In this document: piece after piece, positions 1 to 41,665 of the stretch
Numbering within the stretch: position 1 is the first letter of the stretch
Layout: each line of letters opens with the position of its first letter
Assembly: GCF_964213995.1 (NCBI RefSeq)
Contig: NW_027590591.1
Location: 186,001-246,137, forward strand
Direction of reading: 5' to 3'
DNA: 60,137 nucleotides
Source of the DNA: Mustelus asterias
Lineage: Eukaryota
Position numbers and translations under genes: made by a program
Notes under the pieces: generated by a model
Databases searched by the model: none
The model's input: the letters and a program-made list of their open reading frames with translations, nothing else
Told to the model about the DNA's origin: nothing

Positions 1-672
1 CTGTGCAGAGGGACCTGGGTGTCCTTGTGCAGGAATCTCAAGGAGTTGGTTTGCAGGTGCAGCAGGGAATTAAGAAGGCAAATGGAATTTTGTCCTTCAT
101 TGCTAGAGAGATGGAGTTTAAAAACAGCGAGGTTATGTTGCAGCTGTATAAGGTGCTGGTGAGGCCACACCTGGAGTACTGTGTACAGTTTTGGTCTCCT
201 TACTTGAGAAAGGATATACTGGCACTGGAGGTGGTGCAGAGGAGATTCACTAGGTTGATTCCGGAGTTGAGAGAGTTGGCTTATGAGAAGAGACTGAGTA
301 GACAGGGGCTATACTCATTGGAATTCAGAAGAATGAGGAGAGATCTTAGAAACATATAAGATTATGAAGGGAATAGATAAGATAGAAGTAGGGAAGTTGT
401 TTCCACTGGTGGGTGAAACTAGAACTAGGGGCCATGGCCTCAAAATAAGGGGAAGCGGATTTAGGACTGAGTTGAGGAGGAACTTCTTCACACAAAGGGC
501 TGTGAATCTGTGGAATTCTCTGCCCAGTGAAGCAGTTGAGGCTACCTCATTGAATGTTTTTAAGGCAAGGATAGATAGATTTTTGAACAGTAAAGGAATT
601 AAGGGTTATGGTGAGCGGGCGGGTAAGTGGAGCTGAGTCCACGAAAAGATCAGCCATGATCTTATTGAATGG
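1..672 (+). mobile_element. CR1 LINE 3' fragment (tail continues at ~1903-2404)
   Basis: RT C-terminal motifs LYKVLVRPHLEYCVQFWSP, TRGH and FFTQRAVNLWNSLP; frameshifted. Confidence 0.9.
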
Positions 673-1902
673 TTAGGGAAAAAATCGGACCTCTCAGGGA
701 CAAAAGTGGGGACTTATGCTTGGAGCCCAAAGAGGTAGGGGAGATCCTAAATGAATACTTTGCGTCGGTATTCACTAAGGAGAGGGATGTGTTGACTAGG
801 AGTGTCTCGGAGGGGAGTGTTGAACCGTTGGAGAAAATCTCCATTACAAAGGAGGAAGTGTTAGGTTTGTTAGAGAATATAAAGACTGACAAATCCCCAG
901 GGCCTGATGGAATCTATCCAAGGCTGCTCAGGGAGACGAGAGGTGAAATCGTTGGGCCTCTGACGCAAATCTTTGTCTCGTCACTGGACACAGGTGAGGT
1001 CCCAGAGGATTGGAGGATAGCCAATGTGGTCCCGTTATTTAAGAAGGGTAGGAAGGATAACCCGGGTAATTATAGGCCGGTGAGCTTGACGTCCGTGGTG
1101 GGGAAGTTGTTGGAGAAGATTCTTAGAGATAGGATGTATGCGCATTTAGAAAGGAATAAACTCATTAACGATAGTCAACATGGTTTTGTGAGAGGGAGGT
1201 CATGCCTCACTAACCTGGTGGTGTTTTTTGAAGGGTCGTGGGGGCCTGGAATGTGTTGCCGGGCAAGGTGGTGGAGGCGGACACACTGGGAACGTTTAAG
1301 ACTTATCTAGACAGCTATATGAACGGAGTGGGAATGGAGGGATACAAAAGAGTGGTCTAGTTTGGACCAGGGAGCGGCGCGGGCTAATTGTTCCTGGTTT
1401 CTCGTTTCAAGGCTTCATTCTATGATCATCTTGCTGGTGCCAGTACAGAGTGAGACTGCGGATAGTTGGGAACCTGTCTCGGGGGCAGGGAATTCATATG
1501 GTGTTCGTGGAAGTGGAAATGACTAGGGTTGGGAAGCATTTTCCGATCGGGGCCATTGTGATCTCCTGGACTCGTTTCGATCGCCTCAGGGGGTCGGAGA
1601 GGAATTTCCCAGATTTTTTTTCCCCATATTGGCCCTGGGGTTTTTCACTCTGGGTTTTCGCCTCTCCCTGGAGATCACATGGTCTGGAATGGGGGGGTGG
1701 GGGTAAGTTAATAGGTTGTAATGAACAAAGCATCGTAGCTGTGAGGGACAGCTCAGTGGATAGGATATTGGTATGTAGATAGGCTGGAAAATTGGGCGGG
1801 GATCCTGGATTCAGGATTCAATCCTGGACCGGGGAGCGGCGCGGGCTTGGAGGGCCGAAGGGCCTGTTCCTGTGCTGTATTGTTCTTTGTTCTTTGTTCT
1901 TT
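673..1902 (+). mobile_element. CR1 LINE, internally deleted, nested in the 3'UTR of the preceding CR1
   Basis: KSPGPDGIYPR and NYRPVSLTS motifs; jumps to the 3' end at ~1230; (TTCTTTG)n tail. Confidence 0.85.
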
Positions 1903-2372
1903 GGTGGAGCAGGCTCGAGGGGCCAGATGGCGGAGCAGGCTCGAGGGGGCAGATGGCGGAGCAGGCTCGAGGGGGCAGATGGCGGAGCAGGCTCGAGGGG
2001 GCAGGTGGTGGAGCAGGCTTGAGGGGGCAGATGGCGGGCAGGCTCAAGTGGGCAGATGGCGGAGCAGGCTCGAGGGGCCAGGTGGTGGAGCAGGCTCGAG
2101 GGGCCAGGTGGTGGAGCAGGCTCGAGGGGGCAGATGGCGGAGCAGGCTCGAGGGGGCAGGTGGTGGAGCAGGCTCGAGGGGCCAGGTGGTGGAGCAGGCT
2201 CGAGGGGCCAGGTGGTGGAGCAGGCTCGAGGGGGCAGGTGGCGGAGCAGGCTCGAGGGGGCAGGTGGTGGAGCAGGCTCGAGGGGCCAGATGGCAGAGCA
2301 GGCTCGAGGGGGCAGGTGGCAGAGCAGGCTCGAGGGGGCAGATGGCGGAGCAGGCTCGAGGGGGCAGATGGC
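1903..2372 (+). repeat. 26-bp tandem repeat from the CR1 3'UTR
   Basis: Unit GGCGGAGCAGGCTCGAGGGGGCAGAT, about 18 copies. Confidence 0.9.
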
Positions 2373-2561
2373 CGACTCCCGCTCCGAGTTGTTATGTTCC
2401 TATGAGTAGGGGCAGAAGGTTTTTTTATGTTTAGTTGGGGCAGCATGATTGGCGCAGGCTTGGAGGGGCCGAAGGGCCTGTTCCTGTGCTGTACTTTTCT
2501 TTGTTCTTTGTCCCTAGCTGGGAAAGAGTGAAGATAAATGACCATAATCTACAACTCTAAG

Positions 2562-2890
2562 GGGAGGTGATGGCCTAGTGGTATTATCGCTAGACTATTA
2601 ATCCAGAAACTCAGCTCACGTTCTGGGGACCCGAGTTCGAATCCCGCCACGGCAGATGGTGGAATTTGAATTGAATAAATATATTTGGAATTAAGAATCT
2701 ACTGATGACCATGAAACCATTGTCGATTATCGGAAAACCCATCTGGTTCACTAATGTCCTTTAGGGAAGGAAATCTGCTGTCCTTACCCGGTCTGGCCTA
2801 CATGTGACTCCAGAGCCACAGCAATGTGGCTGACTGTCCAAGGACAATTAGGGGTGGGCAATAAATGCTGGCCCAGCCAGTGACACCCGT
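2562..2890 (+). mobile_element. tRNA-derived SINE (SacSINE1/DeuSINE-like)
   Basis: A-box TGGCCTAGTGG and B-box GTTCGAATCC; the same family recurs at ~37230, ~46605-46922 and ~52480/55887. Confidence 0.7.
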
Positions 2891-2896
2891 GTCAAA

Positions 2897-3216
2897 GAAT
2901 CATAGAATCCAACACTGCAGCAGGAGGCCATTCAGCCCATCGAGTCTGCCCCAACCACAATCCCACCCAGGCCACATCCCCACAACCCCATGTATTTACC
3001 CTGCTAATCTCCCTGACACTAAGGGGCAATTTAGCACGGCCAATCCACCTAAACTGCACATTTTGGAGTGTGGGAGGAAACCAGAGCACCCGGAGGAAAC
3101 CCACGCAGACACGAGGAGAATGTGCAAACTCCACACAGACTGTGACCCGAGCCGGGAATCGAACCCGGATCCCTGGAGCTGTGAGGCAGCAGTGCGAAAC
3201 ACTGTGCCACCGTGCT
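2897..3216 (-). mobile_element. HE1-type SINE
   Basis: tRNA head, core GTGGGTTTCCTCCGGGTGCTC and CR1-like tail. Confidence 0.88.
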
Positions 3217-3609
3217 GCCTCTTATGTCATCGTGCCGCCCCTTGTGCCACTTTGCTTCCCCTCGTGTGCCACGAATGAATAAAAAAACTCTGCATCAATT
3301 GGCTTTAGAAATGGCAAAATGCTCAGCTGGAATTGTGTTCTGTTTGGAAGCAGTCTGTGTCCAAGACCCGGATACTATTCAGGCCTGCGGCTGATGAATG
3401 ATAAGTAACATCTGTGCCACCCACCTGCCAGGCACTGACAATCCCTTCAGGCAGGAGAGGGCCCGGGCTGGATGTTTGTGGAGAAGTCCATCATGTTCGT
3501 GCGTGGCTCGTGGAGTGCCACGCTCTGAATGGCACTAAATCACAACCAGCTGCTTTATGCAGACTAATAGGCAGCCCTCTCCCACAAAGCAAGATCCCAC
3601 ATGTCATTG

Positions 3610-3707
3610 CACCCCTCCCCAAACCTCACACCCCTCCCCAAACCTCACACCCCTCCCCAAACCTCACACCCCTCCCCAAACCTCACACCCCTCCCCAAAC
3701 CTCACAC
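3610..3707 (+). repeat. 20-bp tandem repeat
   Basis: CACCCCTCCCCAAACCTCAC, about 5 copies. Confidence 0.85.
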
Positions 3708-3783
3708 TGAGACTGCTGTGTCCAACCCAAGCATCGTCAAGTGAACAACGTTTAGGAATTCCCAACTGGGCATCGATACCAAC

Positions 3784-3836
3784 CTTCCGTCCTGTTTCAG
3801 GTTCCAGCGGCTGCCCGTCACCCTGCTGCTCAACCC
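3784..3836 (-). CDS. SIT1/TRAT1-like adaptor, cytoplasmic exon (gene continues beyond window start)
   Basis: Acceptor ccattgtctctcctcAG, donor GTTGGT, 53 bp, phase 1-0. Encodes (G)VEQQGDGQPLEPETGRK. Confidence 0.65.
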
Positions 3837-4159
3837 CTGAGGAGAGACAATGGGTGAATCTGAGTGAGCAAGTCAGGGGCTGTGTTCACTGTGATTTCAC
3901 AGGGATCAAGGTGGTTTAAAAATGGCGCAGCCAGCAGAGCGATGGATGGGTAATAACGGTACAGGGAGCGATGGATTAGTGTGGAATAGCAGCTGTGAAT
4001 ACTGGGAGATTGAAGATTGGATGAGAGTTTCTGTGTGAGTGAGTGGGAATGTGAGTGTGTGTATATATGAGTGAGTGTGTGTGAGAGTGAGTGTGTGAGA
4101 GTGAGTGTGTGAGAGTGAGTGTGTGAGAGTCCTGTAAGGTTGAAGGGTAAGTGTGGCAA

Positions 4160-6166
4160 GTTTCCAGAACCTTGGATAACAAGAGATATTGTGAGCCTAG
4201 TCAAAGAGAAAAAGGAAGCATTTGTCAAGTCTAGGAGGCTGGGAACACATAAGCAAACGTGAATACAAGGAAAGTAGAAAGAAATTTAAGCAAAGAGTAA
4301 GAAGGGCTAAAAGGACTCACGAAAAATAATTGGCCAGCAGGATTAAGGAAAATCCCAACGCTTTTTATACATATATAAAGAGCAAGAGTGTAGCCAGTTT
4401 CACCCACTCAAGGTCAGGGGAGGGAATCTAAGTGTGGAGCTAGAGGAAATGGGTGAGGTATTAAGTGGGTACTTTGCATCAGTATTCACCAAAGAGAAGG
4501 ACTTGGTGGATGATGAGTCTGGGAAAGGATGTGTAGTTAGTTTGAGTCATGTTGAGATCAAAAAGGAGGTGGCATTGGGGTTCTTGAGAAACATTAAGGT
4601 AGACAAGTCCCCAGGGCCTGATGGGATATACCCCAGAATACTGAGAGAGGCAAGGGAGGAAATTGCTGGGGCCTTGAGAGAAATCTTTGTATCCTCACTG
4701 GCTACAGGGGAGGTCCCAGAGGATTGGAGAATAGCCAATGTTGTTCCTTTGTTTAAGAAGGGTAGCAAAAATAATCCAGGTAATTACAGGCCGGTGAGCC
4801 TTACATCAGTGATAGGGAAATTATTGGAGAGGATTCTTCGAGACAGGATTTATTCCCACTTGGAAATAAGTGGACGTATGAGTGAGAGGCAACAATGGTT
4901 TTGTGAAGGGGAGGTCGTGTCTCACGAACTTGATTGAGATTTTCGAGGAAGTGACGAAGATGATTGATGAGGGTAGGGCAGTGGATGTTGTCTACATGGA
5001 CTTCAGTAAGGCCTTTGACAAGGTCCCTCATGGCAGACTGGTGCAGAAGGTGAAGTCGCACGGGATCAGAGGTGAGCTGGCAAGATGGATACAGAACTGG
5101 CTCGGTCATAGAAGACAGAGGGTGGCAGTGGAAGGGTGCGTTTCTGAATGGAGGGCTGTGATAAGTGAAGTTCCTCAGGGATCAGTGTTGGGACTTTTGC
5201 TGTTTGTAATATATACAAATGATTTGGAGGAAAATGTAACTGGATTGATTAGCAAGTTTGCGGATGACATAACGGTTGGTGGATTTGCGGATAGCAATGA
5301 GGACCATCAGAGGATGCAGCAGGATATAGATCAGTTGGAGACTTGGGCGGAGAGTTGGCAGATGGAGTTTAATCTGGACAAATGTGAGGTAATGCATTTT
5401 GGAAGGTCTAATACAGACAGGAAATATACAGCAAATGGCAGAACCCTTAAGAGTATTGATAGGCAGAGGGATCTGGGTGTACAGGTACACAGGTCACTGA
5501 AAGTGGCAATGCAGGTGGAGAAAGTAGTCAAGAAGGCATACGGCATGCTTGCCTTCATCGGCCGGGGCATTGAGTTTAAAAATTGGCAAGTCATGTTGCA
5601 GCTTTATAGAACCTTAGTCAAGTCGCACTTGGGATATAGTGTTCAATTCTGGTCGCCACACTACCAGAAGGATGTGGAGGCTTTGGAGAGGGTTGGATTT
5701 ACCAGGATGTTGCCTGGTAAGGAGGGCATTAGCTATGAGGAGAGGTTGGAGAAACATGGTTTGTTCTCACTGGAACGATGAAGGTTAAGGGGCGACCTGA
5801 TAGAAGTCTATAAGATTATGAGAGGCATGGACAGAGTGGATCGTCAGAAGCTTTTTCCCAGGGTGGAAGAGTCAATTACTAGGGGGCAGAGGTTTAAGGT
5901 GCGAGGGGTAAGGTTTAAAGGAGATGTACGAGGCAGATTTTTTACACAGAGGGTGGTGGGTGCCTGGAACTCGCTGCCGGGGGAGGGAGTGGAAACGGAT
6001 ACGATCGTGAATTTTAAGGGGCATCTGGACAAGTACATGAATAGGATGGGAATGGAAGGATATGGTTCTCGGAAGGGTAGGAGGTTTTAGTTCAGTCGGG
6101 CAGCGTGGTCGGTGCAGGCTTGGAGGGCCGAAGGGCCTGTTCCTGTGCTATAATTTTCTTTGTTCT
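4160..6166 (+). mobile_element. CR1 LINE, 5'-truncated, disrupted ORF2
   Basis: RT motifs [16 protein letters not shown] and KFADD; frameshifts and stops; 3' tail. Confidence 0.92.
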
Positions 6167-6469
6167 TCGTGTGTGTGTGTTTCTGTGTGTGTGTGATTGT
6201 GAGTGTGTGTGCGTGTGTGTGCGTCAGTGTATGTGTGACAGTGTGTGTGTGTCAGTGTGCGTCAGTATATATGTGTGTGAGTGCACGTGCGTGCGTGTTA
6301 TACAAACAAATCTACCGTGTCTTTGTCCAGGAAACATTAGATCGATTTAAATGGAATTAGTGGTGGTGTTGGATTAGTTATGGGATCAGCAGCCTGTGGG
6401 GCCAGTGCATCTCTCGCTCAGCACCGAGGTGTGACACTACAGGTGTGAATAGGAAGCGAAACCACTCAC

Positions 6470-6537
6470 CAGTGTAAATGTAGTTGATATTTCCATAAAC
6501 AGGACTGTCCTCCACTTCTTTTGATCGGAAACTAAAG
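6470..6537 (-). CDS. SIT1/TRAT1-like adaptor, YGN-motif exon
   Basis: Acceptor ttcactctgtcacAG, donor GTGAGT, 68 bp, phase 2-1. Encodes (S)FSFRSKEVEDSPVYGNINYIYT, compared with SIT1 VEEVPLYGNLHYLQTG. Confidence 0.85.
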
Positions 6538-6698
6538 CTGTGACAGAGTGAACGAGGTTAGATGGACAAGACCGCCAGCCAGTCAGACGGAAACGAATCA
6601 GTCTCACAAATCTGAGACAGACACACTACATCGAGCCAATTCACGTGAGACACAAAGCACACCTGGAGTGGGGGAGGAGTCTAGGATAAGGGGGACTG

Positions 6699-7320
6699 AA
6701 ACATAGAAACTAGAAGCAGGAGGAGGCCATTCGGCCCTTCCAGCTGCTCCGCCATTCATTTTGATCATGGCTGATCATCGAATTCAATATCCTGATCCCC
6801 CTCCTTCCCCCCCATATCCCTCGATCCCTTTCGCCCCAAGAGCGATATCTAATTTCTTCTTGAAATCACACAACGTTTTGGCCTCAGCTACTTTCTGTGG
6901 GAGTGAATTCCACACATTCACCACCCTCTGGGTGAAGAAATTTCTCCTCACCTCAGTTCTAAAAGGTTTCCCCCTTATCCTCAAACTGTGACCCCTCGTT
7001 CTGGACTCCCCCATCATCCGGAACATTCTTTCTGAATCTACCCTGTCTAACCCTGTTAGAATTTTATAAGTTTCTATGAGATCCCCTCTCACTCTTCTAA
7101 ACTCCAGTGAATATAATCCTAACCCACTTAGTCTCTCCTCATATGACAGACCTGCCATCCCAGGAATCAGCCTGGTAAACCTTCGCTGCGCTCCCTCTAT
7201 ATCAAGGACATCCTTCCTCAGATAAGGACATCAAAACTGCACACAATACTCCAGGTGTGGCCTCACCAACGCCCTATACAATTGCAGCAAAACATTCCTA
7301 TCCCTATACTCAAATCCTCC
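6699..7320 (-). mobile_element. CR1 3' fragment
   Basis: ORF 6784-7158 encodes the RT C-terminus; tail microsatellite. Confidence 0.88.
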
Positions 7321-7334
7321 AAAGGGTTTGGGAG

Positions 7335-7855
7335 TCTGGAATTCTGATCCACAAATGGCAATCAATGGCAGGTTTGCCAGTCTATCACCAGGAATGGGCG
7401 GCTTGTCCTATGAGGAGAGGTTGGAGAGGCCCGGCTTGTATCCACTGGAGTTTGGAAGAGAGAGGCAACTCGGTTGGACCATAGAAGATTGACAGGGTGG
7501 ATGTGGAGAGGATGTTTCCTCTTTTGGGGGAACCTGGAACTAGGGAGGGACATTGTTTAAAAATAAGAGGGAGGTTAGGGGAATTGTTCTCTCTGGGAGG
7601 GTCTCTGGAACTCTTCCTCAGAGGGCAGTGTGGAGGCAGAGCCTGGGAATATTTTTTAAGGCGGAGGTGAACAGATTCTGGATTAACGGGGGGGGGGGGG
7701 GTGGGTGGGTGGGTGGGCGGGGAGAGGTGATCGAGGGGTCAGCGGGAATGTGAAGTTGATGTGACAATCAGATCAAGCTGTGATCTTATCGAATGGGAAG
7801 CAGAGCTCAAGGGGCCGAGTGGCCTTCTCCTGCCCCTAATTCGGATCTACGCATG
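7335..7855 (+). mobile_element. Degenerate CR1 3' fragment
   Basis: YEERL-like and 3'UTR motifs, highly diverged. Confidence 0.65.
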
Positions 7856-7965
7856 GGTCAATGATTAATTTTAACACCGTGAGATTGTTATACATTGAGG
7901 TTGTTAATGGATGAAAACAAAATCTAATTGATATCAAATGCTGCAAGTTGGTCAGGGAATGCCCC

Positions 7966-9232
7966 AGTCTCTCCCTCAATGTCAGCAAAATGAAGGAGAT
8001 TGTCATCGACTTCAGGAAGCTTCGTGGAGAACATGCCCCTGTCTACATCAACGGGGCCGAAGTGGAATCGTCGAGAGCTTCAAGTTTTTAGGTGTCCAGA
8101 TCACCAACAACCTGTCCTGGTCCCCCCACGCTGACACTATAGTTAAGAAAGCCCCACCAACGCCTCTACTTTCTCAGGAGACTAAGGAAATTTGCCATGT
8201 CAGCTACAACTCTCACCAACTTTTACAGATGCACCATAGAAAACATTCTTTCTGGTTGTATCACAGCTTGGTCTGGGCTCCTGCTCTGCCCAAGACCGCA
8301 AGGAACTACAAAAGGTCGTGAATGAAGCCCTGTCCATCACGCAAACCAGCCTCCCATCCATTGACTCTGTCTACACTTCCCGCTGCCTCGGAAAAGCAGC
8401 CAGCATAATCAAGGACCCCCCCACGCACCCTGGATATTTTCTCATCCACCTTCATCCGTCAGGAAAAAGATACAAAAGTCTGAGGTCACATACCAACTGA
8501 CTCAAGAACAGCTTCTTCCCTGCTGCCATCAGACTTTTGAATGGACCGACCTCGCATTAAGTTGATCTTTCTCTACACCCTAGCTATGACTGTAACACTA
8601 CATTCTGCACTCTCTCCTTTATTAAACTAGAAAGAGTGCAGAAAAGATTTACTAGGATGCTACCGGGACTTGATGGATTGAGTTATAAGGAGAGGTTGAA
8701 TAGACTGGGACTTTTTTCCCTGGAGCGTAGGAGGCTGAGGGGTGATCTTACAGAGGTCTATAAAATAATGAGGGGCATAGATCAGCTAGATAGTCAATAT
8801 CTTTTCCCAAAGGTAGGGGAGTCTAAAACTAGAGGGCATAGGTTTAAGGTGAGAGGGGAGAGATACAAAAGTGTCCAGAGGGGCAATTTTTTCACACAGA
8901 GGGTGGTGAGTGTCTGGAACGAGCTGCCAGAGGCAGTAGTAGAGACGGGTACAATTTTGTCTTTTAAAAAGCGTTTAGATAGTTACATGAATAAGATGGG
9001 TATAGAGGGATATGGGCCAAATGCGGGCAATTAGGACTAGCTTAGTGGTTAAAATAAGGGGTGGCATGGACGAGTTGGGCCGAAGGGCCTATTTCCATGC
9101 TGTAAACCTCTGACTCTATGACATCCTTCTCCCCTATGTACTCTATGAACGGTATGCTTTGTCTGTATAGTGCGCAAGAAACAATACATTTCACTGTATC
9201 ACAATACATGCGACAATAATAAATCCAATCAA
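7966..9232 (+). mobile_element. Rex1/Babar-like LINE 3' end, interrupted by a CR1 fragment (8621-9122)
   Basis: FKFLGVQITNNLSW and KNSFFPAAIRLLN motifs; the 3'UTR resumes at ~9125 after the CR1 insert (ORF 8636-9034). Confidence 0.75.
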
Positions 9233-9252
9233 AAAGTTGTTTTCAAGCTTAC

Positions 9253-9289
9253 CTTCTCCGGAATCGAGGTAGGAACTTTGAGGAATGGT
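9253..9289 (-). CDS. SIT1/TRAT1-like adaptor, juxtamembrane micro-exon
   Basis: Acceptor tcctccctctcccacccAG, donor GTAAGC, 37 bp, phase 1-2. Encodes (D)HSSKFLPRFRR; phases bridge the flanking exons exactly. Confidence 0.8.
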
Positions 9290-9480
9290 CTGGGTGGGAG
9301 AGGGAGGACAATGAAATTCATGTTACTGATCGATCACAGACCCCAGGTGGACAGACTATTGCAATCACTGCCAAATCAACCCATTCTGGCTTCAAGTTAT
9401 GAAGCATTTCTTACCAACAGTGTTTGTATTTGTATCAGTGATAGTGTGACAGAACTGCCATATACACCTGCTCCGAGACT

Positions 9481-9740
9481 CATAGAAACATCAAAACCAC
9501 AAGCAGGAGGAGGCCATTCGGCCCTTCCAGCTGCTCCCCCATTCATTTTGATCACGGCTGATCATCAAATTCAATATCCTGATTCCCTTCCCCCCCATAT
9601 CCCTCGATCCCTTTAGCCCCAAGAGCGATATCTAATTTCTTCCTGAAATTACACAACGTTTTGGCCTCAGCTACTTTCTGTGGGAGTGAATTCCACACAT
9701 TCACCACCCTCTGGGTGAAGAAATTTCTCCTCACCTCAAT
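9481..9740 (-). mobile_element. CR1 3' fragment
   Basis: Near-identical to 6699-6955. Confidence 0.85.
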
Positions 9741-9850
9741 CTAATAGGTTTACCCAAAACCATTTCTCGACTAATGCTGATTTCATTCAGTTCCTCAATG
9801 AAACTTGTTTCTCTCGGAACTTCAGGCACATTATTCATGTCTTCCTTTGC

Positions 9851-10165
9851 AGTGGCACAGTGGGTTAGTACTGCTGCCTCACAGTGCCAGGGAGCCGGGC
9901 TCGATTCCAGCCTCGGGTCACTGCCTGTGTGGAGTCTGCACGTTCTCCCTGTGTCGGCGTGGGTTTCCTCCGGGTGCTCCAGTTTTCTCCCACAGTCCGA
10001 AAGATGTGCAGGTCGGGTGGATTGGCCATGCTAAATTGTCCCTTAGTTTCCAAAGATGACTCGCGAGGGTAAATACATGGGTTACAGGTATAGGGCTTGG
10101 GTGGGATTGTTGTTGTGCAGGTTCGATGGGTCGAATGGCCACCTCCTGCCCTGCAGCGATTCTGC
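9851..10165 (+). mobile_element. HE1-type SINE
   Basis: Head GTGGCACAGTGG, B-box, conserved core. Confidence 0.85.
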
Positions 10166-10619
10166 TATTCACTGATTGAATCAGAGTACGAATTTAGTTC
10201 CTCAGCCATATCCCCCGTTTTCTAACTGGAAGCTCCAACTGAGGTTCCTTCCCACGACCCAGGGTGCGCACCCTCGCTCACAATTGGCTTGGCTTCTCGC
10301 GCTCCCTCACCGTAGGGTCTGGCCTGATCATATGGCCCTGGGGAATTGCCCCCTTAAAGGGCCATGCCACCACAGCTATGCGGCTGTTATTCTGACACTG
10401 ATCATCGACGGGAGACAGCTTCACAACCTCCCCCTACATCACAGTTTGTTATCAAAGGGCAGATGGTGGCACACTGATAATGTCACTGGGCTAGGAATGT
10501 GCACTCCAGGCTGCATCCTGGGAACGGAGTCAGGTTTAACTCTCAGCTGGTGGAATTTAAATTCAATTCATAAGATCTGGAATTGAACACTGGTCTCAGT
10601 GACGGAGAGGCTACCTGCT

Positions 10620-13420
10620 AGTGCGGCACTCTCTCAGCACTGACCCTCCCTCAGCACTGACCCTCCCTCAGCACTGACCCTCCCTCAGCACTGACCCTCC
10701 CACAGCACTGACCCTCCCTCAGCACTGACCCTCCCTCAGCACTGACCCTCCCTCAGCACTGACCGTCCCTCAGCACTGATCCTCCCTCAGCACTGACCCT
10801 CCCACAGTGCGGCGCTCCCTCAGCACTGACCCTCCCTCAGCACTGATCCTCCCTCAGCACTGACCCTCCCTCAGCACTGACCCTCCCTCAGCACTGACCC
10901 TCCCTCAGCACTGACCCTCCCACAGTGCAACGCTCCCTCAGCACTGACCCTCCCACAGTGCAGTGCTCCCTCAGCACTGACCCTCCCACAGTGCGACGCT
11001 CCCTCAGCACTGACCCTCCCACAGTGCAGTGCTCCCTCAGCACTGACCCTCCCACAGTGCGGCACTCCCTCAGCACTGACCCTCCCACAGTGCGGCGCTC
11101 CCTCAGCACTGACCCTCCCACAGTGCGGCGCTCCCTCAGCACTGACCCTCCCTCAGCACTGCCCTCCCTCAGCACTGACCCTCCCACAGTGCGGCGCTCC
11201 TTCAGCGCTGACACTCCCACAGTGCGGCGCTCCCCCAGCACTGACCCTCCCACAGTGCGGCGCTCCCTCAGCACTGACCCTCCCACAGTGCGGCGCTCCC
11301 TCAGCACTGACCCTCCCACAGTGCGGCACTCCCTCAGCACCGACCCTCCCACAGTGCGGCGCTCCCTCAGCACTGACCCTCCCACAGTGCGGCGCTCCCT
11401 CAGCACTGACCCTCCCACAGTGCGGCGCTCCCTCAGCACTGACCCTCCCACAATGCGGCGCTCCCTCAGCGCTGACCCTCCCACAGTGCGGCGCTCCCCC
11501 AGCACTGACCCTCCCACAGTGCGGCGCTCCCTCAGCACTGACCCTCCCACAGTGCGGCGCTCCCTCAGCACTGACCCTCCCTCAGCACTGCCCTCCCTCA
11601 GCACTGACCCACCCACAGTGCGGCGCTCCTTCAGCGCTGACCCTCCCAAATGCGGCGCTCCCCCAGCACTGACCCTCCCACAGTGCGGCGCTCCCTCAGC
11701 ACTGACCCTCCCACAGTGCGGCGCTCCCTCAGCACTGACCCTCCCACAGTGCGGCACTCCCTCAGCACCGACCCTCCCACAGTGCGGCGCTCCCTCAGCA
11801 CTGACCCTCCCACAGTGCGGCGCTCCCTCAGCACCGACCCTCCCACAGTGCGGCGCTCCCTCAGCACTGACCCTCCCACAGTGCGGCGCTCCCTCAGCAC
11901 TGACCCTCCAACAGTGCGGCGCTCCCTCAGCACTGACCCTCCCTCAGCACTGCCCTCCCTCAGCACTGACCCTCCCACAGTGCGGCGCTCCTTCAGCGCT
12001 GACCCTCCCACAGTGCGGCGCTCCCCCAGCACTGACCCTCCCACAGTGCGGCGCTCCCTCAGCACCGACCCTCCCACAGTGCGGCGCTCCCTCAGCACTG
12101 ACCCTCCCACAGTGCGGCGCTCCCTCAGCACCGACCCTCCCACAGTGCGGCGCTCCCTCAGCACTGACCCTCCCACAGTGCGGCGCTCCCTCAGCACCGA
12201 CCCTCCCACAGTGCGGCGCTCCCTCAGCACCGACCCTCCCACAGTGCGGCGCTCCCTCAGCACCGACCCTCCCACAGTGCGGCGTTCCTCAGCACCGACC
12301 CTCCCACAGTGCGACGCTCCCTCAGCACTGACCCTCCCACAGTGCGGCGCTCCCTCAGCACTGACCCTCCCACAGTGCGGCGCTCCCTCAGCACCGACCC
12401 TCCCACAGTGCGGCGCTCCCTCAGCACTGACCCTCCCACAGTGTGACGCTCCCTCAGCACTGACCCTCCCACAGTGTGACGCTCCCTCAGATCTGACCCT
12501 CCCACAGTGTGACGCTCCCTCAGCACTGACACTCCCACAGTGCGGCGCTCCCTCAGCACTGACCCTCCCACAGTGCGGCGCTGCCTCAGCACTGACCCTC
12601 CCACAGTGTGACGCTCCCTCAGATCTGACCCTCCCACAGTGTGACGCTCCCTCAGCACTGACCCTCCCACAGTGTGACGCTCCCTCAGCACTGACCCTCC
12701 CACAGTGCGGCGCTCCCTCAGCACTGACCCTCCCACAGTGCGGCGCTCCCTCAGCACTGACACTCCCACAGTGCGGCGCTCCCTCAGCACTGACCCTCCC
12801 ACAGAGCGGCGCTCCCTCAGCACTGACCCTCCCACAGTGCGGCGCTGCCTCAGCACTGACCCTCCCACAGTGCGGCGCTCCCTCAGCACTGACCCTCCCA
12901 CAGTGCGGCGCTCCCTCAGCACTGACCCTCCCACAGTGCGGCGCTCCCTCAGCACTGACCCTCCCACAGTGCGGCGCTCCCTCTGCACTGACCCTCCCAC
13001 AGTGTGGCGCTCCCTCAGCACTGACCCTCTCACAGTGCGGCGCTCCCTCAGCACTGACCCTCCCACAGTGTGGTGCTCCCTCAGCACTGACCCTCCCACA
13101 GTGCGGTGCTCCCTCAGCACTGACCCTCCCACAGTGCGGCGCTCCCTCAGCACTGACCCTCCCACAGTGCGGCGCTCCCTCAGCACCGACCCTCCCACAG
13201 TGCGGCGCTCCCTCCGCACTGACCCTCCCACAGTGCGGCGCTCCCTCAGCACTGACCCTCCCACAGTGCGGCGCTCCCTCAGCACTGACCCTCCCACAGT
13301 GCGGCGCTCCCTCAGCACCGACCCTCCCACAGTGCGGCGCTCCCTCAGCACTGACCCTCCCACAGTGCGGCGCTCCCTCAGCACCGACCCTCCCACAGTG
13401 CGGCGCTCCCTCCGCACTGC
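10620..13420 (+). repeat. 33-bp minisatellite (with 17-bp subunits) in an adaptor-gene intron
   Basis: Unit CAGCACTGACCCTCCCACAGTGCGGCGCTCCCT over about 2.8 kb. Confidence 0.97.
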
Positions 13421-13718
13421 ATGACGCGAAGTTGCTCGGAATTTATCCTTTGTGTTGGGGACTGAACCCAAGTCTGTTTGTCCCCTGAGTTGAGTGTTTT
13501 ACCCCGAGAGCCGCAGTTCACAGTGTGACGGCTCGACAGCCGAGATAACTGACGAATGCTGATCTCCTCAACCCTGTGGTCAGGGATTGTCCGCCCCTCT
13601 CCTCCGAGTCCCGTTACTGAACCAACCTGAGCCCAAATACAGCCGCCCCTCCTCTCCCCTCTCCCCATAGCCAGCTCTGTCCCAGAAATTCTGTGATTGT
13701 GGGGGGGGGGCACGTTAC

Positions 13719-13835
13719 CTTTCCTGTAGTTCCGAGTACAGCTGAGAATGTTACCCGTCAGGGACAGGAGCAGCACGAACCCTGTTGCCCCGAAGATAAG
13801 CCACATCGAGGTGCTGCAGCACCAGTCCTGAAACC
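13719..13835 (-). CDS. SIT1/TRAT1-like adaptor, transmembrane exon
   Basis: Acceptor ctctgttgctattgtAG, donor GTAAC, 117 bp, phase 1-1. Encodes (G)FQDWCCSTSMWLIFGATGFVLLLSLTGNILSCTRNYRK; the TM resembles SIT1 (WVLLGAVTLLFLISLAAHL) and TRAT1 (LVISLIFNI) as I recall them. Confidence 0.82.
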
Positions 13836-13971
13836 CTACAATAGCAACAGAGTCAGAGTTAACCATCTCCCACAGCAGAGAATTTAACCGTCTCCCCTTC
13901 ACATCGCCACCGTTATATCACATCCTGGATGGGTTACCATTCAACAGAACCTGAACTGGAAACCGGCCAAC

Positions 13972-14253
13972 ATGATGGCACAATGGTTAGCCCTGCTGCC
14001 GGCTTCCATTCCCGGCTTGGGTCACTGTCTGTGCGGAGTCTGCACGTTGTCCCCGTATCTGCGTGGGTTTCCTCCGGGAGCTCCGGTTTCCTCCCACAGT
14101 CCAAAAGATGTGCTGGTTATGATGCATTGGCCGTGCTAAATTCACCCTCAGTGAACCCGAACAGGCACCGGAGTGTGGCCACTCGGGGATTTTCACAGTA
14201 ACTTCATAGCAGTGTTAATGTAAGCCTTACTTGTGACACTAATAAATAAACTT
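13972..14253 (+). mobile_element. HE1-like SINE with alternative tail
   Basis: HE1 head/core followed by ...CACAGTAACTTCAT...GTGACACTAATAAATAAACTTT. Confidence 0.75.
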
Positions 14254-14254
14254 T

Positions 14255-14590
14255 ACCAGAGCAGGTCAGAGGCTGGGAATCCTGCGGAGAGTAACTCACC
14301 TCCTGACTCCCTCCAAAGCCTGTCCGCCATTCACAAGGACACAAGTCAGGAGTGTGATGGAACACTCCCCACTTGCCTGGATGGGTGCGGCTCCCAACAA
14401 CACTCGAGAAGCTCAACACCATCCAGGACAAAGCAGCCCCGCTCGATCGACACGCTAACCACAAACACTCACTCCCTCCACCACCGACGCACAGTGACAG
14501 CCGTGTGTACCGTCTACAAGATGCACCGCAGCCACTCACCAAGGCTCCTTAGGCAGCACCTTCCAAACCCAACTCTGCTGCCTAGAAGGG
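14255..14590 (+). mobile_element. CR1/L2-group LINE 3' fragment
   Basis: HSLHHRRTVxAVCTxYKMH segment; other copies at 20170-20895(-), 38764-39275(+) and 40090-40710(-). Confidence 0.7.
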
Positions 14591-15065
14591 TCCCATTTCC
14601 CTCTCTTTCTACCCGAAGGATTAAGGCAGTTGCCATCTCTTACCGCTGCAGACCTGATCATGCTGATCATCGACCATTTCCCCGCCTTTGCCCTCGCGAC
14701 AGCCCCTCTCTCTCTCCGTCTCCGGTGTGGGCTGGGGATCAGTTTGCAGCTCTGTCCAGGGTAGCCCTTCCTCGGGTCTCTCGCCAGGGTGCGGGGGGGA
14801 CGGGGGGGGGACGGTGGTTTGACTGACTTGGGATGATTACCGTGTCACACGGGGCCCTTCCATCTGAATGGTGGAGACCAGTTCCTTCTGTTTCTCCTAC
14901 TCTGGTGGCCTTTTAGCCCTCTTTGTCTTCGATGTCACGGTCCCCTTCTCTCGGTGCACCAGTCCCTCTTCAGATACAGCTGCCTACCCTCCTCTCCGAC
15001 CTGTACCTGTCCAAACGTCCTGCTCCTTATCCCTCACCGCCTATCGCTGTCTGACTGTAACCCCA

Positions 15066-15412
15066 CTTCTCTCTCTGTCTCCCTCTCCCTCTCTGTCTCA
15101 CTCTTCCTGGTCTCTTTCTCTCCCTCTCTCTGTCTCACTCTTCCTGGTCTCTATCTCTCCCTCTCTCTGTCTCACTCTTCCTGGTCTCTATCTCTCCCTC
15201 TCTCTCTGTCTCTCCTCTCTGTCCGCCTCTCTTCTCTCTCTTCGTACTGTGTCTCTCTCGGTTTGAGTGCGGGTGCCGTTCTCTCCCCCCGATGCCCTTC
15301 CCGTCTCTGTCTCTCTCGCTTCCCCACCCACTTGTCGACAACGCCCCTTTCTCTGTCTCTCTGTCGCTCTCTCTGTCTCTCTTGTTCTCGCTCTCTCCCG
15401 CTCACTCTCTCA
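15066..15412. repeat. CT-rich low-complexity repeat
   Basis: (CT)n-rich with repeated TCTCACTCTTCCTGGTCTCT units. Confidence 0.85.
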
Positions 15413-15456
15413 GAGGAGCGGGTGACAGTTTAATATTTCAGAAAGTACGGCCTCAC

Positions 15457-15499
15457 CACAAGAGAGACATGAGGCGAGAGTCTGGGGTGCGAAAACCAT
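15457..15499 (-). CDS. SIT1/TRAT1-like transmembrane adaptor, first coding exon
   Basis: ATG at 15499-15497, MVFAPQTLASCLSC + G, strong donor GTGAGG. Phase 1 matches the next exon; promoter-like motifs lie just upstream. Confidence 0.65.
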
Positions 15500-15600
15500 C
15501 TGCCGCTTCCTGTCGCACCCGCCCTCCCATCCCGCTGAGGATCCTGGACCCTCACAAAAAAACAAATGGCAGGGCGTGGAACGGCCGCCGCCAATAAAAC
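15500..15600 (-). promoter_or_regulatory. Putative promoter/5' region of the adaptor gene
   Basis: CpG-containing unique sequence with ETS core ACAGGAAG (15506-15513, minus), GC-box-like GGGCGTGG (15572-15579) and CCAAT (15591-15595) directly upstream of the ATG. Confidence 0.4.
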
Positions 15601-16124
15601 AATCCTTTTCCAAGTAATTGGTGAAGTTAGGGAGACATGTCAGTCAAGGTTTGTTTGAGAAAAATGCTTAACTGGATCATGACAACTTGGCGGGGTGAGC
15701 TTTGCTGCATCGATGGAACAGGAAACCGCAGCTGCCTTCCCCTCCTGCACGCGGCAGCTGGAACAAAGTGACAAGATTCAAAGTCTTTCTCAGTAGAACC
15801 TTCCGGCACCTTGGATTGAGATTTGGGGGGTGTTGTGGGGGTGGGGGGTTTGGGGGGGGGGGTGCAAACGCCATTGGTCGGGCTGGCTCAGGCATTGTTG
15901 GAAGCCTCCTCAGTTCCCGCTTGCACGCCCCCCCCCCCCCCCACCCGTGTGTGGCCTGGTCCTCGGCACCGCGGGGGGAGGGGTTCCAGCTCCGGCCTGT
16001 TACCCAGGCCTGGCAGGGCCCCGCTGGGGAACGGGTCAGCTCAAGGGGAAGGGGTGTTAATTGCTGCCCATCGCCAGCCACGCTCACGACCCCCACGACG
16101 CAAAAACGAAAGGTCAAGCGTGAG

Positions 16125-17060: not shown

Positions 17061-18243
17061 AGAACATAGAAAAAATACAGCACAAACAGGCCCTTCGTCC
17101 CACAAGTTGCGCCGGTCATGTCCCGACCTACCTCGGCTTATATATAGGCTTACCTATAACCTTAATCCTATTAAGTCCCATGTACTCATCCAGAAGTCTC
17201 TTAAAAGACCCTATCGAGTTTGCCTCCACCACCACTGACGGCAGCCGATTCCACTCACCCACCACTCTCTGAGTGAAAAACTTACCCCTGACATCTCCCC
17301 TGTACCTACTCCCCAGCACCTTAAACCTGTGTCCTCTCGTAGCAGCCATTTCAGCCCTGGGAAAAAGCCTCCGAGAATCCACCCGATCTATACCTCTCAA
17401 CATCTTGTAAACCTCTATCAGGTCACCTCTCATCCTTCATCTCTCCAAGGAGAAAAGACCGAGCTCCCTCAACCTATCCTCATAAAGCATGCCAACCAAT
17501 CCAGGCAACATCGTTGGAAATCTTCTCTGCACCCTTTCAATCATTTCCACATCCCTCCTGTAATGAGGCGACCAGAACTGAGCACAGTACTCCAAGTGGG
17601 GTCTGACGAGGGTCTTATAAAGCTGCATCATTATCTCCCGACTCCTAAACTCCATCCCTTGATTGATGAAGGCCAGCACACCATACGCCTTCTTAACCAC
17701 CTCCTCTACCTGCGAGGTCGATTTTAGAGTCCTATGGACCCGGACCCCAAGGTCCTTCTGATCCTCTACACTGCTAAGAGTCTTACCCTTGATATTATAC
17801 TCCTTCATCCCATTTGACCTGCCAAAATGGACCACTACACATTTATCCAGGTTGAAGTCCATCTGCCACTTCTCCGCCCAGTCTTGCATCCTATCTATGT
17901 CACGCTGCAGCTTCTGACATCCCTCCAACCTATCCACAACACCACCAACCTTCGTGTCATCAGCAAACTTACCAACCCATCCCTCCACTTCCTCATCCAG
18001 GTCATTTATGAAAATGACAAACAGCAAGGGTCCCAGAACAGATCCCTGGGGCACACCACTGGTGACCGACCTCCATTCAGAAAAAGACCCATCTACAACC
18101 ACTCTCTGCCTTCTGCAGGCAAGCCAGTTCTGGATCCACAAGACAACAGCCCCTTGGATCCCATGCCCTCTCACTTTCTCGAGAAGTCTTGCATGGGGGA
18201 CCTTATCGAATGCCTTGCTGAAGTCCATGTAAACCACATCCAC
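17061..18243 (-). mobile_element. CR1 LINE, 5'-truncated
   Basis: ORFs 17437-18285 and 17128-17433 encode RT. Confidence 0.92.
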
Positions 18244-18395
18244 TAAGGGGCAATTTATCATGGCCAATCCACCTAACCTGTACATCTTTGGACACTAAGG
18301 GGCAATTTAGCATGGCCAATCCACCTAACCTGTACATCTTTGGACACTAAGGGACAATTTAGCATGGCCAATCCCCCTAACCTACACATCTTTGA
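18241..18395 (-). repeat. 52-bp tandem repeat from the HE1 SINE body
   Basis: CACTAAGGGGCAATTTAGCATGGCCAATCCACCTAACCTGTACATCTTTGGA x3. Confidence 0.8.
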
Positions 18396-23985: not shown

Positions 23986-25940
23986 TAGAAACATAGAAAC
24001 ATAGAACAGTACAGCACAGAACAGGCCCTTCGGCCCACGATGTTGTGCCGAGCTTTATCTGAAACAAAGATCAAGCTATCCCACTCCCTATCATCCTGGT
24101 GTGCTCCATGTGCCTATCCAATAACCGCTTAAATGTTCCTAAAGTGTCTGACTCCACTATCACTGCAGGCAGTCCAGTCCACACCCCAACCACTCTCTGC
24201 GTAAAGAACCTACCTCTGATATCCTTCCTATATCTCCCACCATGAACCCTATAGTTATGCCCCCATGTAATAGCTCCATCCACCCGAGGAAATAGTCTTT
24301 GAACGTTCACTCTATCTATCCCCTTCATCATTTTATAAACCTCGATTAAGTCTCCCCTCAGCCTCCTCCGCTCCAGAGAGAACAGCCCCAACTCCCTCAA
24401 TCTTTCCTCATAAGACCTACCCTCCAAACCAGGCAGCATCCTGGTAAATCTCCTCTGCACTCTTTCCAGCGCTTCCACATCCTTCTTATAGTGAGGTGAC
24501 CAGAACTGCACACAATATTCCAAATGTGGTCTCACCAAGGTCCTGTACAGTTGCAGCATAACCCCACGGCTCTTAAACTCCAACCCCCTGTTAATAAAAG
24601 CTAACACACTATAGGCCTTCTTCACAGCTCTATCCACTTGAGTGGCAACCTTTAGAGATCTGTGGATATGGACCCCAAGATCTATCTGTTCCTCCACAGT
24701 CTTCAGAACCCTACCTTTGACCCTGTAATCCACATTTAAATTAGTCCTACCAAAATGAATCACCTCACATTTATCAGGGTTAAACTCCATTTGCCATTTT
24801 TCAGCCCAACTTTGCATCCTATCTATGTCTCTTTGCAGCCTACAACAGCCCTCCACCTCATCCACTACTTCACCAATCTTGGTGTCATCAGTAAATTTAC
24901 TGATCCACCCTTCAGCCCCCTCCTCTAAGTCATTAATAAAAATCACAAAGAGCAGAGGACCAAGCACTGATCCCTGTGGCACTCCACTAGCAACCTGCCT
25001 CCAGTCCGAAAATTTTCCATCCACCACCACCCTCTGTCTTCGATCAGATAGCCAGTTACCTATCCAATCGGCCAACTTTCCCTCGATCCCACACCTCCTT
25101 ACTTTCCTCATAAGCCGACCATGGGGGACCTTATCAAACGCCTTACTAAAATCCATGTATATGACATCAACTGCCCTACCTTCATCAACACACTTAGTTA
25201 CCTCCTCAGAAAATTCAATCAAATTTGTGAGGCACGACTTGCCCTTCACGAATCCGTGGTGACTTTCCCGGATTAATCCGCATCGTTCTAAATGGTCATA
25301 AATCTCATCCCTAAGGATCGTTTCCATCAATTTACCAACCACCGAAGTAAGACTAACCGGTCTATAATTACCAGGGTCATTTCTATTCCCTTTCTTAAAC
25401 AGAGGAACAACATTCGTCACTCTCCAGTCCTCTGGCACCATCCCCGTGGACAGTGAGGACCCAAAGATCAAAGCCAAAGGCTCTGCAATCTCATCCCTTG
25501 CCTCCCAAAGAATCCTAGGATACATTTCATCAGGCCCAGGGGACTTATCGACCTTCAGTTTATTCAAAACTGCCAGTACATCCTCCCTCCGAACAACTAT
25601 TTCCTCCAGCCTATTAGCCTGTAACACCTTCTCGTCCTCAAAAACATGGCCCCTCTCCTTGGTGAACACTGAAGAAAAGTATTCATTCATCACCTCGCCT
25701 ATCTCTACTGACTCCATACACAAGTTCCCACTACAGTCCTTGACCGGCCCTAACCTCACCCTGGTCACTCTTTTATTCCTCACATAAGAGTAAAAAGCCT
25801 TGGGGTTTTCCTTGATCCGACCCGCCAAGGACTTCTCATGTCCCCTCCAAGCTCTCCTAAGCCCCTTTCTCAGCTCATTCCTTGCTAACTTGTAACCCTC
25901 AATCGAGCCATCTGAACCTTGTTTCCTCATCCCTACATAA
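23986..25940 (-). mobile_element. CR1 LINE, 5'-truncated, open RT frame
   Basis: ORF 24071-26008 encodes RT; tail (TTCTATGT)n. Confidence 0.93.
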
Positions 25941-41655: not shown

Positions 41656-41665
41656 ACTGAATAAT

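What the first reader, a model, noticed from the sequence alone, without database searches (positions are those of the whole stretch)
3784..15499. Hidden multi-exon SIT1/TRAT1-like lymphocyte transmembrane adaptor gene
Five small exons, mostly missed by the ORF track, splice in phase (1,1,2,1,0) to MVFAPQTLASCLSCGFQDWCCSTSMWLIFGATGFVLLLSLTGNILSCTRNYRKDHSSKFLPRFRRSFSFRSKEVEDSPVYGNINYIYTGVEQQGDGQPLEPETGRK... The short ectodomain, the TM with SLxxNI and EDSPVYGNINY (YxN, Grb2-SH2 type) match the SIT1/TRAT1 dimeric adaptor family that tunes TCR signalling. Such fast-evolving adaptors are easily missed in shark annotations.
Basis: partly seen in the sequence, partly recalled or inferred. Interest (0 to 1): 0.8.

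Follow-up and report, generated by a model that had tools for sequence, protein, structure and literature searches.

The report
Shark SIT1 T-cell adaptor gene
This is the front half of the shark counterpart of SIT1, a small membrane adaptor that tunes lymphocyte receptor signalling; the gene is real and spliced but is already in the public annotation, so it is ordinary.

Summary
They have AG/GT borders and the stated phases. Their translation is 100% identical to residues 12-103 of a public RefSeq model, XP_078061378.1, [quoted passage not shown], 206 aa.

One spliced contig of run X21 joins 15064-14644 (ATG at 14677) directly to E2 and leaves the genome exactly at E2's donor. Residues 104-206 lie outside the window.

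The family call holds, and more precisely the gene is a SIT1 orthologue:
- Pfam SIT (PF15330) is the only family hit in 14 of 14 relatives, but Mustelus scores 21.9 bits, under the 27.6 cut-off.
- A profile-profile comparison with named SIT1 gives probability 99.93% and E 2.9e-36.
- All five SIT tyrosine motifs align in order.
- No protein named TRAT1 was retrieved.

The gene is not hidden. NCBI already names three elasmobranch orthologues "SIT1-like". Interest is low. The one side lead is its position about 26 kb from an MHC-like gene.

The parts
14644..15064 (-). First exon as seen in RNA-like contig (5' UTR plus CDS 14677-14644, MVDDQHDQVCS and first base of Gly12). The 5' limit is unknown: the contig has 33 more letters running into a skipped low-complexity stretch.
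   Evidence: X21 record 18: letters 34-455 lie on 15064-14643 and letters 456-571 on 13834-13719, with no letters between. P0001 aa 1-12 = 14677-14642 at 100%; donor GTAAGA.
13719..13835 (-). Exon 2: end of the ectodomain (CC), the transmembrane helix (best 19-aa hydropathy window LIFGATGFVLLLSLTGNIL) and the juxtamembrane SCTRNYRK.
   Evidence: borders, hydropathy; 100% to P0001 aa 12-50; X21 contig enters at the acceptor and leaves at the donor, while the DNA-like runs X19 and X22 run straight through.
9253..9289 (-). Exon 3: DHSSKFLPRFRR(S), basic juxtamembrane stretch.
   Evidence: (100% to P0001 aa 51-62); FLP and R62 invariant in 9 of 9 elasmobranchs.
6470..6537 (-). Exon 4: FSFRSKEVEDSPVYGNINYIYT, with the Y77-G-N-I (YxN, Grb2-type) motif.
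   Evidence: (100% to P0001 aa 63-86); E72, P75, Y77, G78, N79 invariant in 14 of 14 aligned SIT1 relatives.
3784..3836 (-). Exon 5: (G)VEQQGDGQPLEPETGRK, a variable linker. It splices in phase 0 to exon(s) left of the window.
   Evidence: (P0001 aa 86-103; aa 104-206 have no match in the window).
15457..15499 (-). It is not supported as a coding exon. At most it is an upstream ORF, if transcription starts further upstream.
   Evidence: X21 record 23 covers 15426-15682 without a joint at 15457/15456; one of 5 formally equivalent candidates; orthologue N-termini match the other exon.
9415..9546 (-). Alternative first coding exon of predicted isoform X2 (P0007). It lies inside a dispersed repeat in intron 2. 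That isoform reads E3 in another frame, skips E4 and lacks the transmembrane helix.
   Evidence: P0007 aa 1-44 = 9546-9415 at 100%; a 79% copy lies at 6759-6688.
10620..13419 (.). 33-bp tandem array (84.7 copies) filling much of intron 2. It is not coding for this gene.
   Evidence: the long repetitive ORFs come from it.

Best explanation
The region holds the 5' half (five coding exons, residues 1-103 of 206) of the elasmobranch orthologue of SIT1 (signaling threshold-regulating transmembrane adapter 1, also called SHP2-interacting transmembrane adaptor). In public data it is Mustelus asterias LOC144487199. Shown here: the exon structure, one splice junction and one further splice-site border in an RNA-like contig, and full-length homology to named SIT1. 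Inferred from the characterised mammalian protein: it is a leaderless type III membrane protein with a ~22-residue ectodomain. Cys10 would make the disulfide-linked homodimer, followed by one transmembrane helix and a disordered tail. After antigen-receptor triggering, Src/Syk-family kinases would phosphorylate the tail tyrosines. These would then recruit SH2 proteins: Y77GNI and Y198VNK of the YxN/Grb2 type; C-Y112AKL and L-Y181ASV of the YxxL/V type; and T-Q-Y133AET at the place of SIT's SHP2-binding ITIM. The expected net effect is a raised activation threshold. In Mustelus the +3 residue of the ITIM-equivalent motif is Thr and the N-glycosylation sequon beside the Cys is absent, so SHP2 recruitment and glycosylation may differ from mammals (inference).
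For: Exon borders and phases. Identity to the public protein: E2 peptide to P0001 at E 6.6e-18 and 100%; all five coding exons at 100% by tblastn; names. RNA-like evidence: X21 record 18 joins 14643/4 to 13834/5 and stops matching at 13719, with 106 further letters off the stretch (E3+E4 = 105 nt); X19 and X22 contigs are collinear with the genome there. Family: PF15330 SIT is the only Pfam family, for P0001 (E 2.6e-4) and for 14 of 14 aligned relatives (best 1.1e-8). Profile searches return only SIT1 or SIT1-like names among named hits, from gar, paddlefish, teleosts, a caecilian, an alligator and turtles. hhalign of 9 elasmobranch sequences against 7 bony-vertebrate SIT1 gives 99.93%, E 2.9e-36, 178 columns from the ectodomain Cys to the C-terminus. 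Alignment A2 has Y77, G78, N79, C111, Y112, A113, Y133, L180, Y181, S183, V184, Y198, N200 invariant in 14 of 14. These match the published SIT motifs Y90GNL, MCY127TSL, VxY148xxV, Y169ASV, Y188ANS. There is one sequence per species, and the elasmobranchs form one clade (100/100) beside bony-vertebrate SIT1.
Against: P0001's Pfam score (21.9 bits) is under the curated cut-off of 27.6. No TRAT1 sequence was available for a direct comparison, so 'SIT1 rather than TRAT1' rests on which names the profile searches returned and on motif order. The ITIM position reads YAET in Mustelus, which is not a canonical ITIM. The SIT N-glycosylation sequon is missing. The published TM motif WGxxxxxG is only approximated (W23...G27..G30). 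Junctions E2-E3, E3-E4 and E4-E5 were not seen directly in reads. Run X21's kind is '?', and its tissue is unknown. All function is inferred; nothing was assayed.
Confidence: 0.9

Rival explanations
1. It is the shark TRAT1 (TRIM) orthologue, or an undivided SIT/TRIM ancestor-type gene, rather than SIT1.
For: E-D-S-P-V-Y-G-N-I is letter for letter nearer to TRIM's EDTPIYGNL than to SIT's EEVPLYGNL, and C-Y-A-K-L is nearer to TRIM's MCYASL. Five of 9 elasmobranch orthologues carry Y-T-G-M, a YxxM-type motif, 7 residues after YGNI. No TRAT1 sequence was in any comparison.
Against: Every named relative found by three profile or sequence searches is SIT1 or SIT1-like, and none is TRAT1. Homology to SIT1 runs to the very C-terminus, including the ITIM position, LYASV and YAN. 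Per, TRIM lacks an ITIM. Mustelus itself has no YxxM. The ectodomain is ~22 residues rather than 8.
Confidence: 0.06
2. The reader's exon 1 (15499-15457) is a genuine alternative first coding exon, giving a second N-terminus.
For: It has an open ATG, a good GTGAGG donor and the right phase. X21 has a low-depth contig over 15426-15682, so the place may be transcribed. Contigs drop rare variants.
Against: That contig reads straight through the donor. Neither of the two RefSeq isoforms uses it. It is one of 5 equivalent candidates by chance criteria. Orthologue N-termini resemble the other exon.
Confidence: 0.08
3. The exons are chance ORFs or a decayed pseudogene among repeats.
For: The introns are packed with LINE/SINE copies and tandem arrays. 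A second predicted isoform is clearly aberrant.
Against: There is a spliced contig, an intact frame over all exons, and strong conservation of the encoded motifs in 8 other elasmobranchs and in bony vertebrates.
Confidence: 0.01

Closest known systems
SIT1 / SIT (SHP2-interacting transmembrane adaptor; signaling threshold-regulating transmembrane adapter 1), Pfam PF15330
   Same: Both have a short Cys-bearing ectodomain, a single TM helix with an invariant Trp and the S..N pair, and five tail tyrosine motifs in the same order (YGN[IL], CYxxL, ITIM position, LYASV, YxN). The spacing of the first three is similar: 35 and 21 residues here against 37 and 21 in human numbering. Full-length profile homology is 99.93%.
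   Different: Mustelus has no N-x-S/T sequon beside the Cys, whereas 7 of 9 elasmobranchs have one by my reading of alignment A1. An elasmobranch-only Cys-Cys pair sits just before the TM. The ITIM-equivalent is T-Q-Y-A-E-T. The linker between Y133 and Y181 is longer, 48 residues against 21. The Pfam score is under the cut-off.
[quoted passage not shown]
   Same: It is a leaderless disulfide-dimer type III adaptor and shares the EDxP[IV]YGN[IL] and (M)CYAxL motifs.
   Different: TRIM has an 8-residue ectodomain, binds PI3K p85 through Y79xxM and has no ITIM. Mustelus has no YxxM and carries the SIT-type C-terminal motifs. No TRAT1 was retrieved by the profile searches.
Elasmobranch RefSeq models named 'signaling threshold-regulating transmembrane adapter 1-like' (Heterodontus francisci P0005, Heptranchias perlo P0006, Pristis pectinata P0010)
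   Same: They are 51-63% identical over the full length, have the same length class (205-210 aa), and share 47 invariant columns across the 9 elasmobranch sequences of A1.
   Different: The differences are the name (the Mustelus model is 'uncharacterized protein') and the lineage-specific substitutions listed above.

Membership tests
SIT1 (PF15330 SIT) | Match to the Pfam SIT profile at or above the gathering score | tested here: inconclusive
   P0001 scores 21.9 bits, E 2.6e-4, against a cut-off of 27.6, and SIT is the only family hit. SIT is hit by 14 of 14 aligned relatives at E<=0.01, best 1.1e-8. Exon peptides alone gave 0 hits.
SIT1 (PF15330 SIT) | Full-length homology to proteins named SIT1 | tested here: met
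   hhalign A1 vs A3: 99.93%, E 2.9e-36, 178 columns. Profile search hits include caecilian SIT1 at 1.3e-22 and alligator SIT1 at 4.2e-14.
SIT1 (PF15330 SIT) | Short ectodomain with one Cys for the interchain disulfide, no large extracellular domain | tested here: met
   About 22 residues precede the hydrophobic window 24-42. C10 is invariant in 9 of 9 elasmobranchs. Dimerisation itself was not tested.
SIT1 (PF15330 SIT) | Single N-glycosylation sequon adjacent to or including that Cys | tested here: not met
   Mustelus reads DDQHDQVC, which has no N-x-S/T. By my reading of A1, 7 of 9 elasmobranchs have NQT, NET or NQS just before the Cys. This looks like a lineage loss and does not argue against orthology.
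SIT1 (PF15330 SIT) | Five tail tyrosine motifs: YGNL, MCYxSL, ITIM VxYxxV, YASV, YANS | tested here: met
   Y77GNI, C-Y112AKL, Y133 at the ITIM column, L-Y181ASV and Y198VN all align with named SIT1. The ITIM column reads TQYAET in Mustelus, so four motifs are canonical and one deviates.
SIT1 (PF15330 SIT) | TM motif WGxxxxxG | tested here: inconclusive
   W23 is invariant in 14 of 14. Mustelus reads W-LIF-G-AT-G, so the spacing differs.
SIT1 (PF15330 SIT) | Lymphocyte expression, tyrosine phosphorylation, SHP2 binding, negative regulation of TCR signalling | not testable with these tools
   There is only one RNA-like contig from a run of unknown tissue.
TRAT1 / TRIM | YxxM motif that binds PI3K p85 | tested here: not met
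   None of the 8 tyrosines of P0001 is followed by M at +3. Five of 9 elasmobranch orthologues do have YTGM.
TRAT1 / TRIM | 8-residue ectodomain and absence of an ITIM-position motif | tested here: not met
   The ectodomain is about 22 residues. A conserved Y133 lies at the SIT ITIM column.
TRAT1 / TRIM | Sequence closer to TRAT1 than to SIT1 | not tested

The most novel reading that the evidence does not exclude
In sharks, SIT1 may be physically linked to an MHC-like (possibly W-category) gene. In the window, the last matching MHC-like exon ends at 41248 and the SIT1 first exon starts about 26 kb downstream on the same strand. In the white shark, a RefSeq model (P0003) even fuses SIT1-type exons 1-2 to the orthologous MHC-like exons. 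If this linkage is ancient rather than a local accident, a TCR-threshold adaptor belonged to the primordial MHC neighbourhood and was later moved away in bony vertebrates. A smaller novelty is that three galeomorph sharks replaced the hydrophobic +3 residue of the SHP2-binding ITIM by Thr, which may have rewired the adaptor.
Probability: 0.15. Interest if true: 0.45.

Novelty: already known. Interest (0 to 1): 0.15.

Why it matters
The work gives a name (SIT1 orthologue) to a RefSeq locus labelled 'uncharacterized' in Mustelus asterias, and likewise in Cetorhinus, Hemiscyllium, Mobula, Narcine and Rhinoraja. It also shows that the full set of SIT tyrosine motifs was already in place in the common ancestor of jawed vertebrates. 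That is useful for annotation and for comparative work on T-cell signalling. It is not surprising, because NCBI already calls three elasmobranch orthologues SIT1-like. The only lead with wider interest is the neighbourhood with an MHC-like gene.

Tried and rejected
**Exon-by-exon family scans.**
- Pfam and NCBIfam scans of the E2 (38 aa) and E4 (22 aa) peptides gave 0 hits each. The peptides are too short, and NCBIfam is a prokaryote library, so that call was of little use.
- E1, E3 and E5 peptides (14, 12 and 17 aa) are under the tools' minimum length. They were compared only through the tblastn of the public protein on the window.
Full-length work used the public proteins that the E2 search returned.

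**Other calls that led nowhere.**
- The bacterial promoter/terminator scan upstream of the gene was irrelevant and found nothing.
- The 3' exons were looked for in 1-3784 by ORF listing and tblastn. Nothing was found there beyond repeats.
- Read-through of E5's weak donor stops after 39 further codons and matches nothing. The public model splices there.
- A duplication origin for the two first-exon candidates is rejected: blastn-short found no hit longer than 9 bases.

**Limits of the run search.**
- Eighteen runs of other organisms hold 5-11% of the words. Laying X1 showed that it covers only the dispersed repeats at about 13900-14600 and no exon.

**Papers.**
- Two searches for shark or cartilaginous-fish SIT1/TRAT1 listed no such paper in this library.
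- The W-category MHC paper PMC8713811 has 0 mentions of SIT1 in its main text (passages only). Its supplementary Fig. S12A on the genomic neighbourhood could bear on the linkage lead, but supplements are closed.
- Of PMC12512852, PMC2212462 and PMC2193021 I saw only the passages returned by 'find'.
- Recalled, from no call: the human chromosomal location of SIT1, and Csk binding to YASV.

**Rows dropped.**
- Alignments A1 and A2 omit P0003 (chimera) and P0007 (isoform X2).
- The tree used 17 of the 32 proteins held. It left out those two, the turtle fragments P0030 and P0032, the partial or extended isoforms P0021, P0025 and P0028, several teleosts (P0017, P0018, P0022, P0026, P0027) and the three unnamed Logan proteins.

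Full report
**What is in the sequence.**
- E2 is 13835-13719, with acceptor tgtAG and donor GTAACG.
- E3 is 9289-9253, with cccAG and GTAAGC. I located it by a motif search.
- E4 is 6537-6470, with cacAG and GTGAGT.
- E5 is 3836-3784, with ctcAG and a weaker GTTGGT donor.

The phases fit and the peptide reads as quoted. The introns are filled with LINE and SINE copies and an 84.7-copy 33-bp tandem array at 10620-13419.

**Searching exon by exon.** The E2 (38 aa) and E4 (22 aa) peptides alone hit no Pfam or NCBIfam family. The other exon peptides are below the tools' minimum length. The E2 peptide was scored against 1.84 billion representative proteins and gave 3 hits:
- P0001, 100% identical, E 6.6e-18.
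- P0002, 66% identical, E 2.0e-07.
- P0003, 70% identical, E 3.9e-07.

By exact look-up, P0001 is XP_078061378.1, [quoted passage not shown], 206 aa. P0002 is an uncharacterized Hemiscyllium ocellatum protein and P0003 a Carcharodon carcharias one.

A tblastn of P0001 on the window puts residues 12-50, 51-62, 63-86 and 86-103 on E2, E3, E4 and E5 at 100% identity. The one mismatch in the E5 row is intron translation at the border. Residues 104-206 match nothing in the window, so the 3' half of the gene lies to the left of it.

**Transcript evidence.** The single run search (on 13500-15700) gave four runs of one organism that hold the stretch: X19-X22, with shares 0.78 to 0.40, all of kind '?'. 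It also gave 18 runs of other organisms with small shares.

I laid X21, X22, X1 and X19 on 13450-15750. All are Logan contigs, so they show presence only.
- X21 record 18 (677 letters, depth 12.7) lies on 15064-14643 with its letters 34-455 and on 13834-13719 with letters 456-571. It therefore skips 14642-13835, bounded by GT..AG once the one-base ambiguity is resolved. It has 106 further letters that do not lie on the intron after 13719. E3 plus E4 are 105 nt, but I could not see those letters.
- X19 and X22 contigs are collinear with the genome across these same borders (records 9, 15, 24, 30), as DNA would be.
- X1 covers only the dispersed repeats at about 13900-14600.

So one junction (first exon to E2) and the E2 donor are seen in an RNA-like contig, and the first coding exon is 14677-14644. 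It shares no DNA similarity with the true one. The N-termini of 8 other elasmobranch orthologues align with MVDDQHDQVC-SG (for example MGGTQHNQSC-KG in the basking shark).

**What it is.**
- Pfam gives SIT (PF15330) as the only family for P0001 (E 2.6e-4, 21.9 bits, cut-off 27.6) and for P0002 (23.6 bits).
- A search with P0001 found one homologue in each of 8 other sharks and rays. NCBI names three of them "signaling threshold-regulating transmembrane adapter 1-like". It also found isoform X2 of the same locus.
- A profile of the 9 elasmobranch sequences reached gar, paddlefish, catfish, caecilian and alligator SIT1 at E 6.7e-32 to 4.2e-14.
- A wider profile at E<=10 returned 30 proteins. Every named one is SIT1, SIT1-like or uncharacterized, and none is named TRAT1. 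Only the 8000 candidates sharing most words were scored.
- Two 164-aa turtle hits that I checked are C-terminal SIT1 fragments.
- All 14 members of alignment A2 hit PF15330 at E<=0.01, best 1.1e-8.
- hhalign of the elasmobranch alignment against 7 bony-vertebrate SIT1 sequences gives 99.93% and E 2.9e-36 over 178 columns.
- In a 17-row tree the elasmobranchs form one clade (100/100), with one sequence per species. No TRAT1 outgroup was available.

**Anatomy against the literature.** Passages of the SIT paper (PMC2193021) give for the human protein:
- an 18-aa ectodomain with one N-glycosylation site whose sequon includes the dimerising Cys;
- a TM helix with the motif WGxxxxxG;
- the tail motifs EEVPLY90GNL, MCY127TSL, the ITIM VxY148xxV, Y169ASV and Y188ANS.

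The same passages note that TRIM shares EDTPIY63GNL and MCY110ASL. TRIM has an 8-aa ectodomain and binds p85 through Y79xxM.

The Mustelus protein has C10, a Cys-Cys pair at 17-18, a hydrophobic window at 24-42, EVEDSPVY77GNI, MCY112AKL, TQY133AETL, LY181ASV and EY198VNK. In A2 the residues of all five motifs are invariant across 14 sequences.

The deviations are these.
- Mustelus has no N-x-S/T sequon before the Cys. By my reading of A1, 7 of 9 elasmobranchs have one.
- The residue at +3 of the ITIM position is Thr in Mustelus, Cetorhinus and Hemiscyllium. It is I or V in Heterodontus, Heptranchias and the four batoids.
- Mustelus has no YxxM, although 5 of 9 elasmobranchs have YTGM.

**How it most likely works.** This is inferred from mammalian SIT, not shown here. 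The protein would be a leaderless, disulfide-linked dimeric adaptor in lymphocyte membranes. After antigen-receptor triggering, its phosphorylated tail would recruit Grb2-type and Src/Csk-type SH2 proteins, and perhaps more weakly SHP2 in this lineage. The effect would be to set the activation threshold.

**Novelty.** The gene model is public, and orthologues are already named SIT1-like. Two paper searches listed no article on shark SIT1 or TRAT1 in this library.

**Side lead.** The MHC-like part of P0003 maps there on the minus strand (59706-59437, 45315-45193, 41316-41248) and has weak MHC_I and MHC_II_beta Pfam hits. P0003 starts with SIT1-type exons 1-2. The two genes are therefore probably neighbours on the same strand in the white shark too, though the fusion may be an artefact of gene prediction. 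The W-category paper's main text does not mention SIT1, and its supplements were closed.

Noticed in passing
window 41248-59706, minus strand: Exons of an MHC-like gene (membrane-distal domain at 59706-59437, TM at 45315-45193, tail at 41316-41248) lie about 26 kb upstream of SIT1 on the same strand. They match the C-terminal 177 residues of white-shark P0003, which has only weak Pfam hits to MHC_I (E 0.0026) and MHC_II_beta (E 0.016).
   Followed up: partly
P0003 (XP_041035582.1, Carcharodon carcharias), no window coordinates: This RefSeq model is a chimera. Residues 1-50 are SIT1-type exons 1-2 and the rest is the MHC-like gene. It is either a gene-prediction fusion of neighbours or a real rearrangement in the white shark.
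   Followed up: no
window 9415-9546 and 6688-6759, minus strand: Predicted isoform X2 (P0007) starts in a dispersed repeat inside intron 2. A 79% copy sits in intron 3. The isoform reads E3 in another frame and skips E4, so it has no TM helix. It is probably a non-functional or artefactual transcript model.
   Followed up: partly
window 10620-13419 and about 35040-35880: There is a 33-bp tandem array (84.7 copies, 93% matches) in SIT1 intron 2. The same unit gives long repetitive ORFs again near 35 kb. It creates ORFs of 400-600 codons on both strands that are not genes.
   Followed up: partly
window 1902-2372: A 26-bp tandem array (18.2 copies, 92% matches) lies next to LINE fragments.
   Followed up: no
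window 13900-14600: SINE-like and other dispersed repeats in SIT1 intron 1 are covered at enormous summed depth in all four runs laid, including run X1 of another organism. This explains the small-share 'holders' of the run search.
   Followed up: partly
alignment A1, columns of P0001 residues 82-87 and 131-136: Five of 9 elasmobranch SIT1 carry Y-T-G-M (a YxxM type, as in TRIM's p85 site) just after YGNI. Three galeomorph sharks have Thr instead of Ile/Val at +3 of the ITIM-position tyrosine.
   Followed up: no
window 17437-18285, 24071-26008, 28923-30308, 52676-55495 and others: There are many copies of a reverse-transcriptase-bearing LINE, one with a 939-codon ORF, and a second retroelement family at 31954-34282 and 49818-51227. 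The window is mostly repeats.
   Followed up: no
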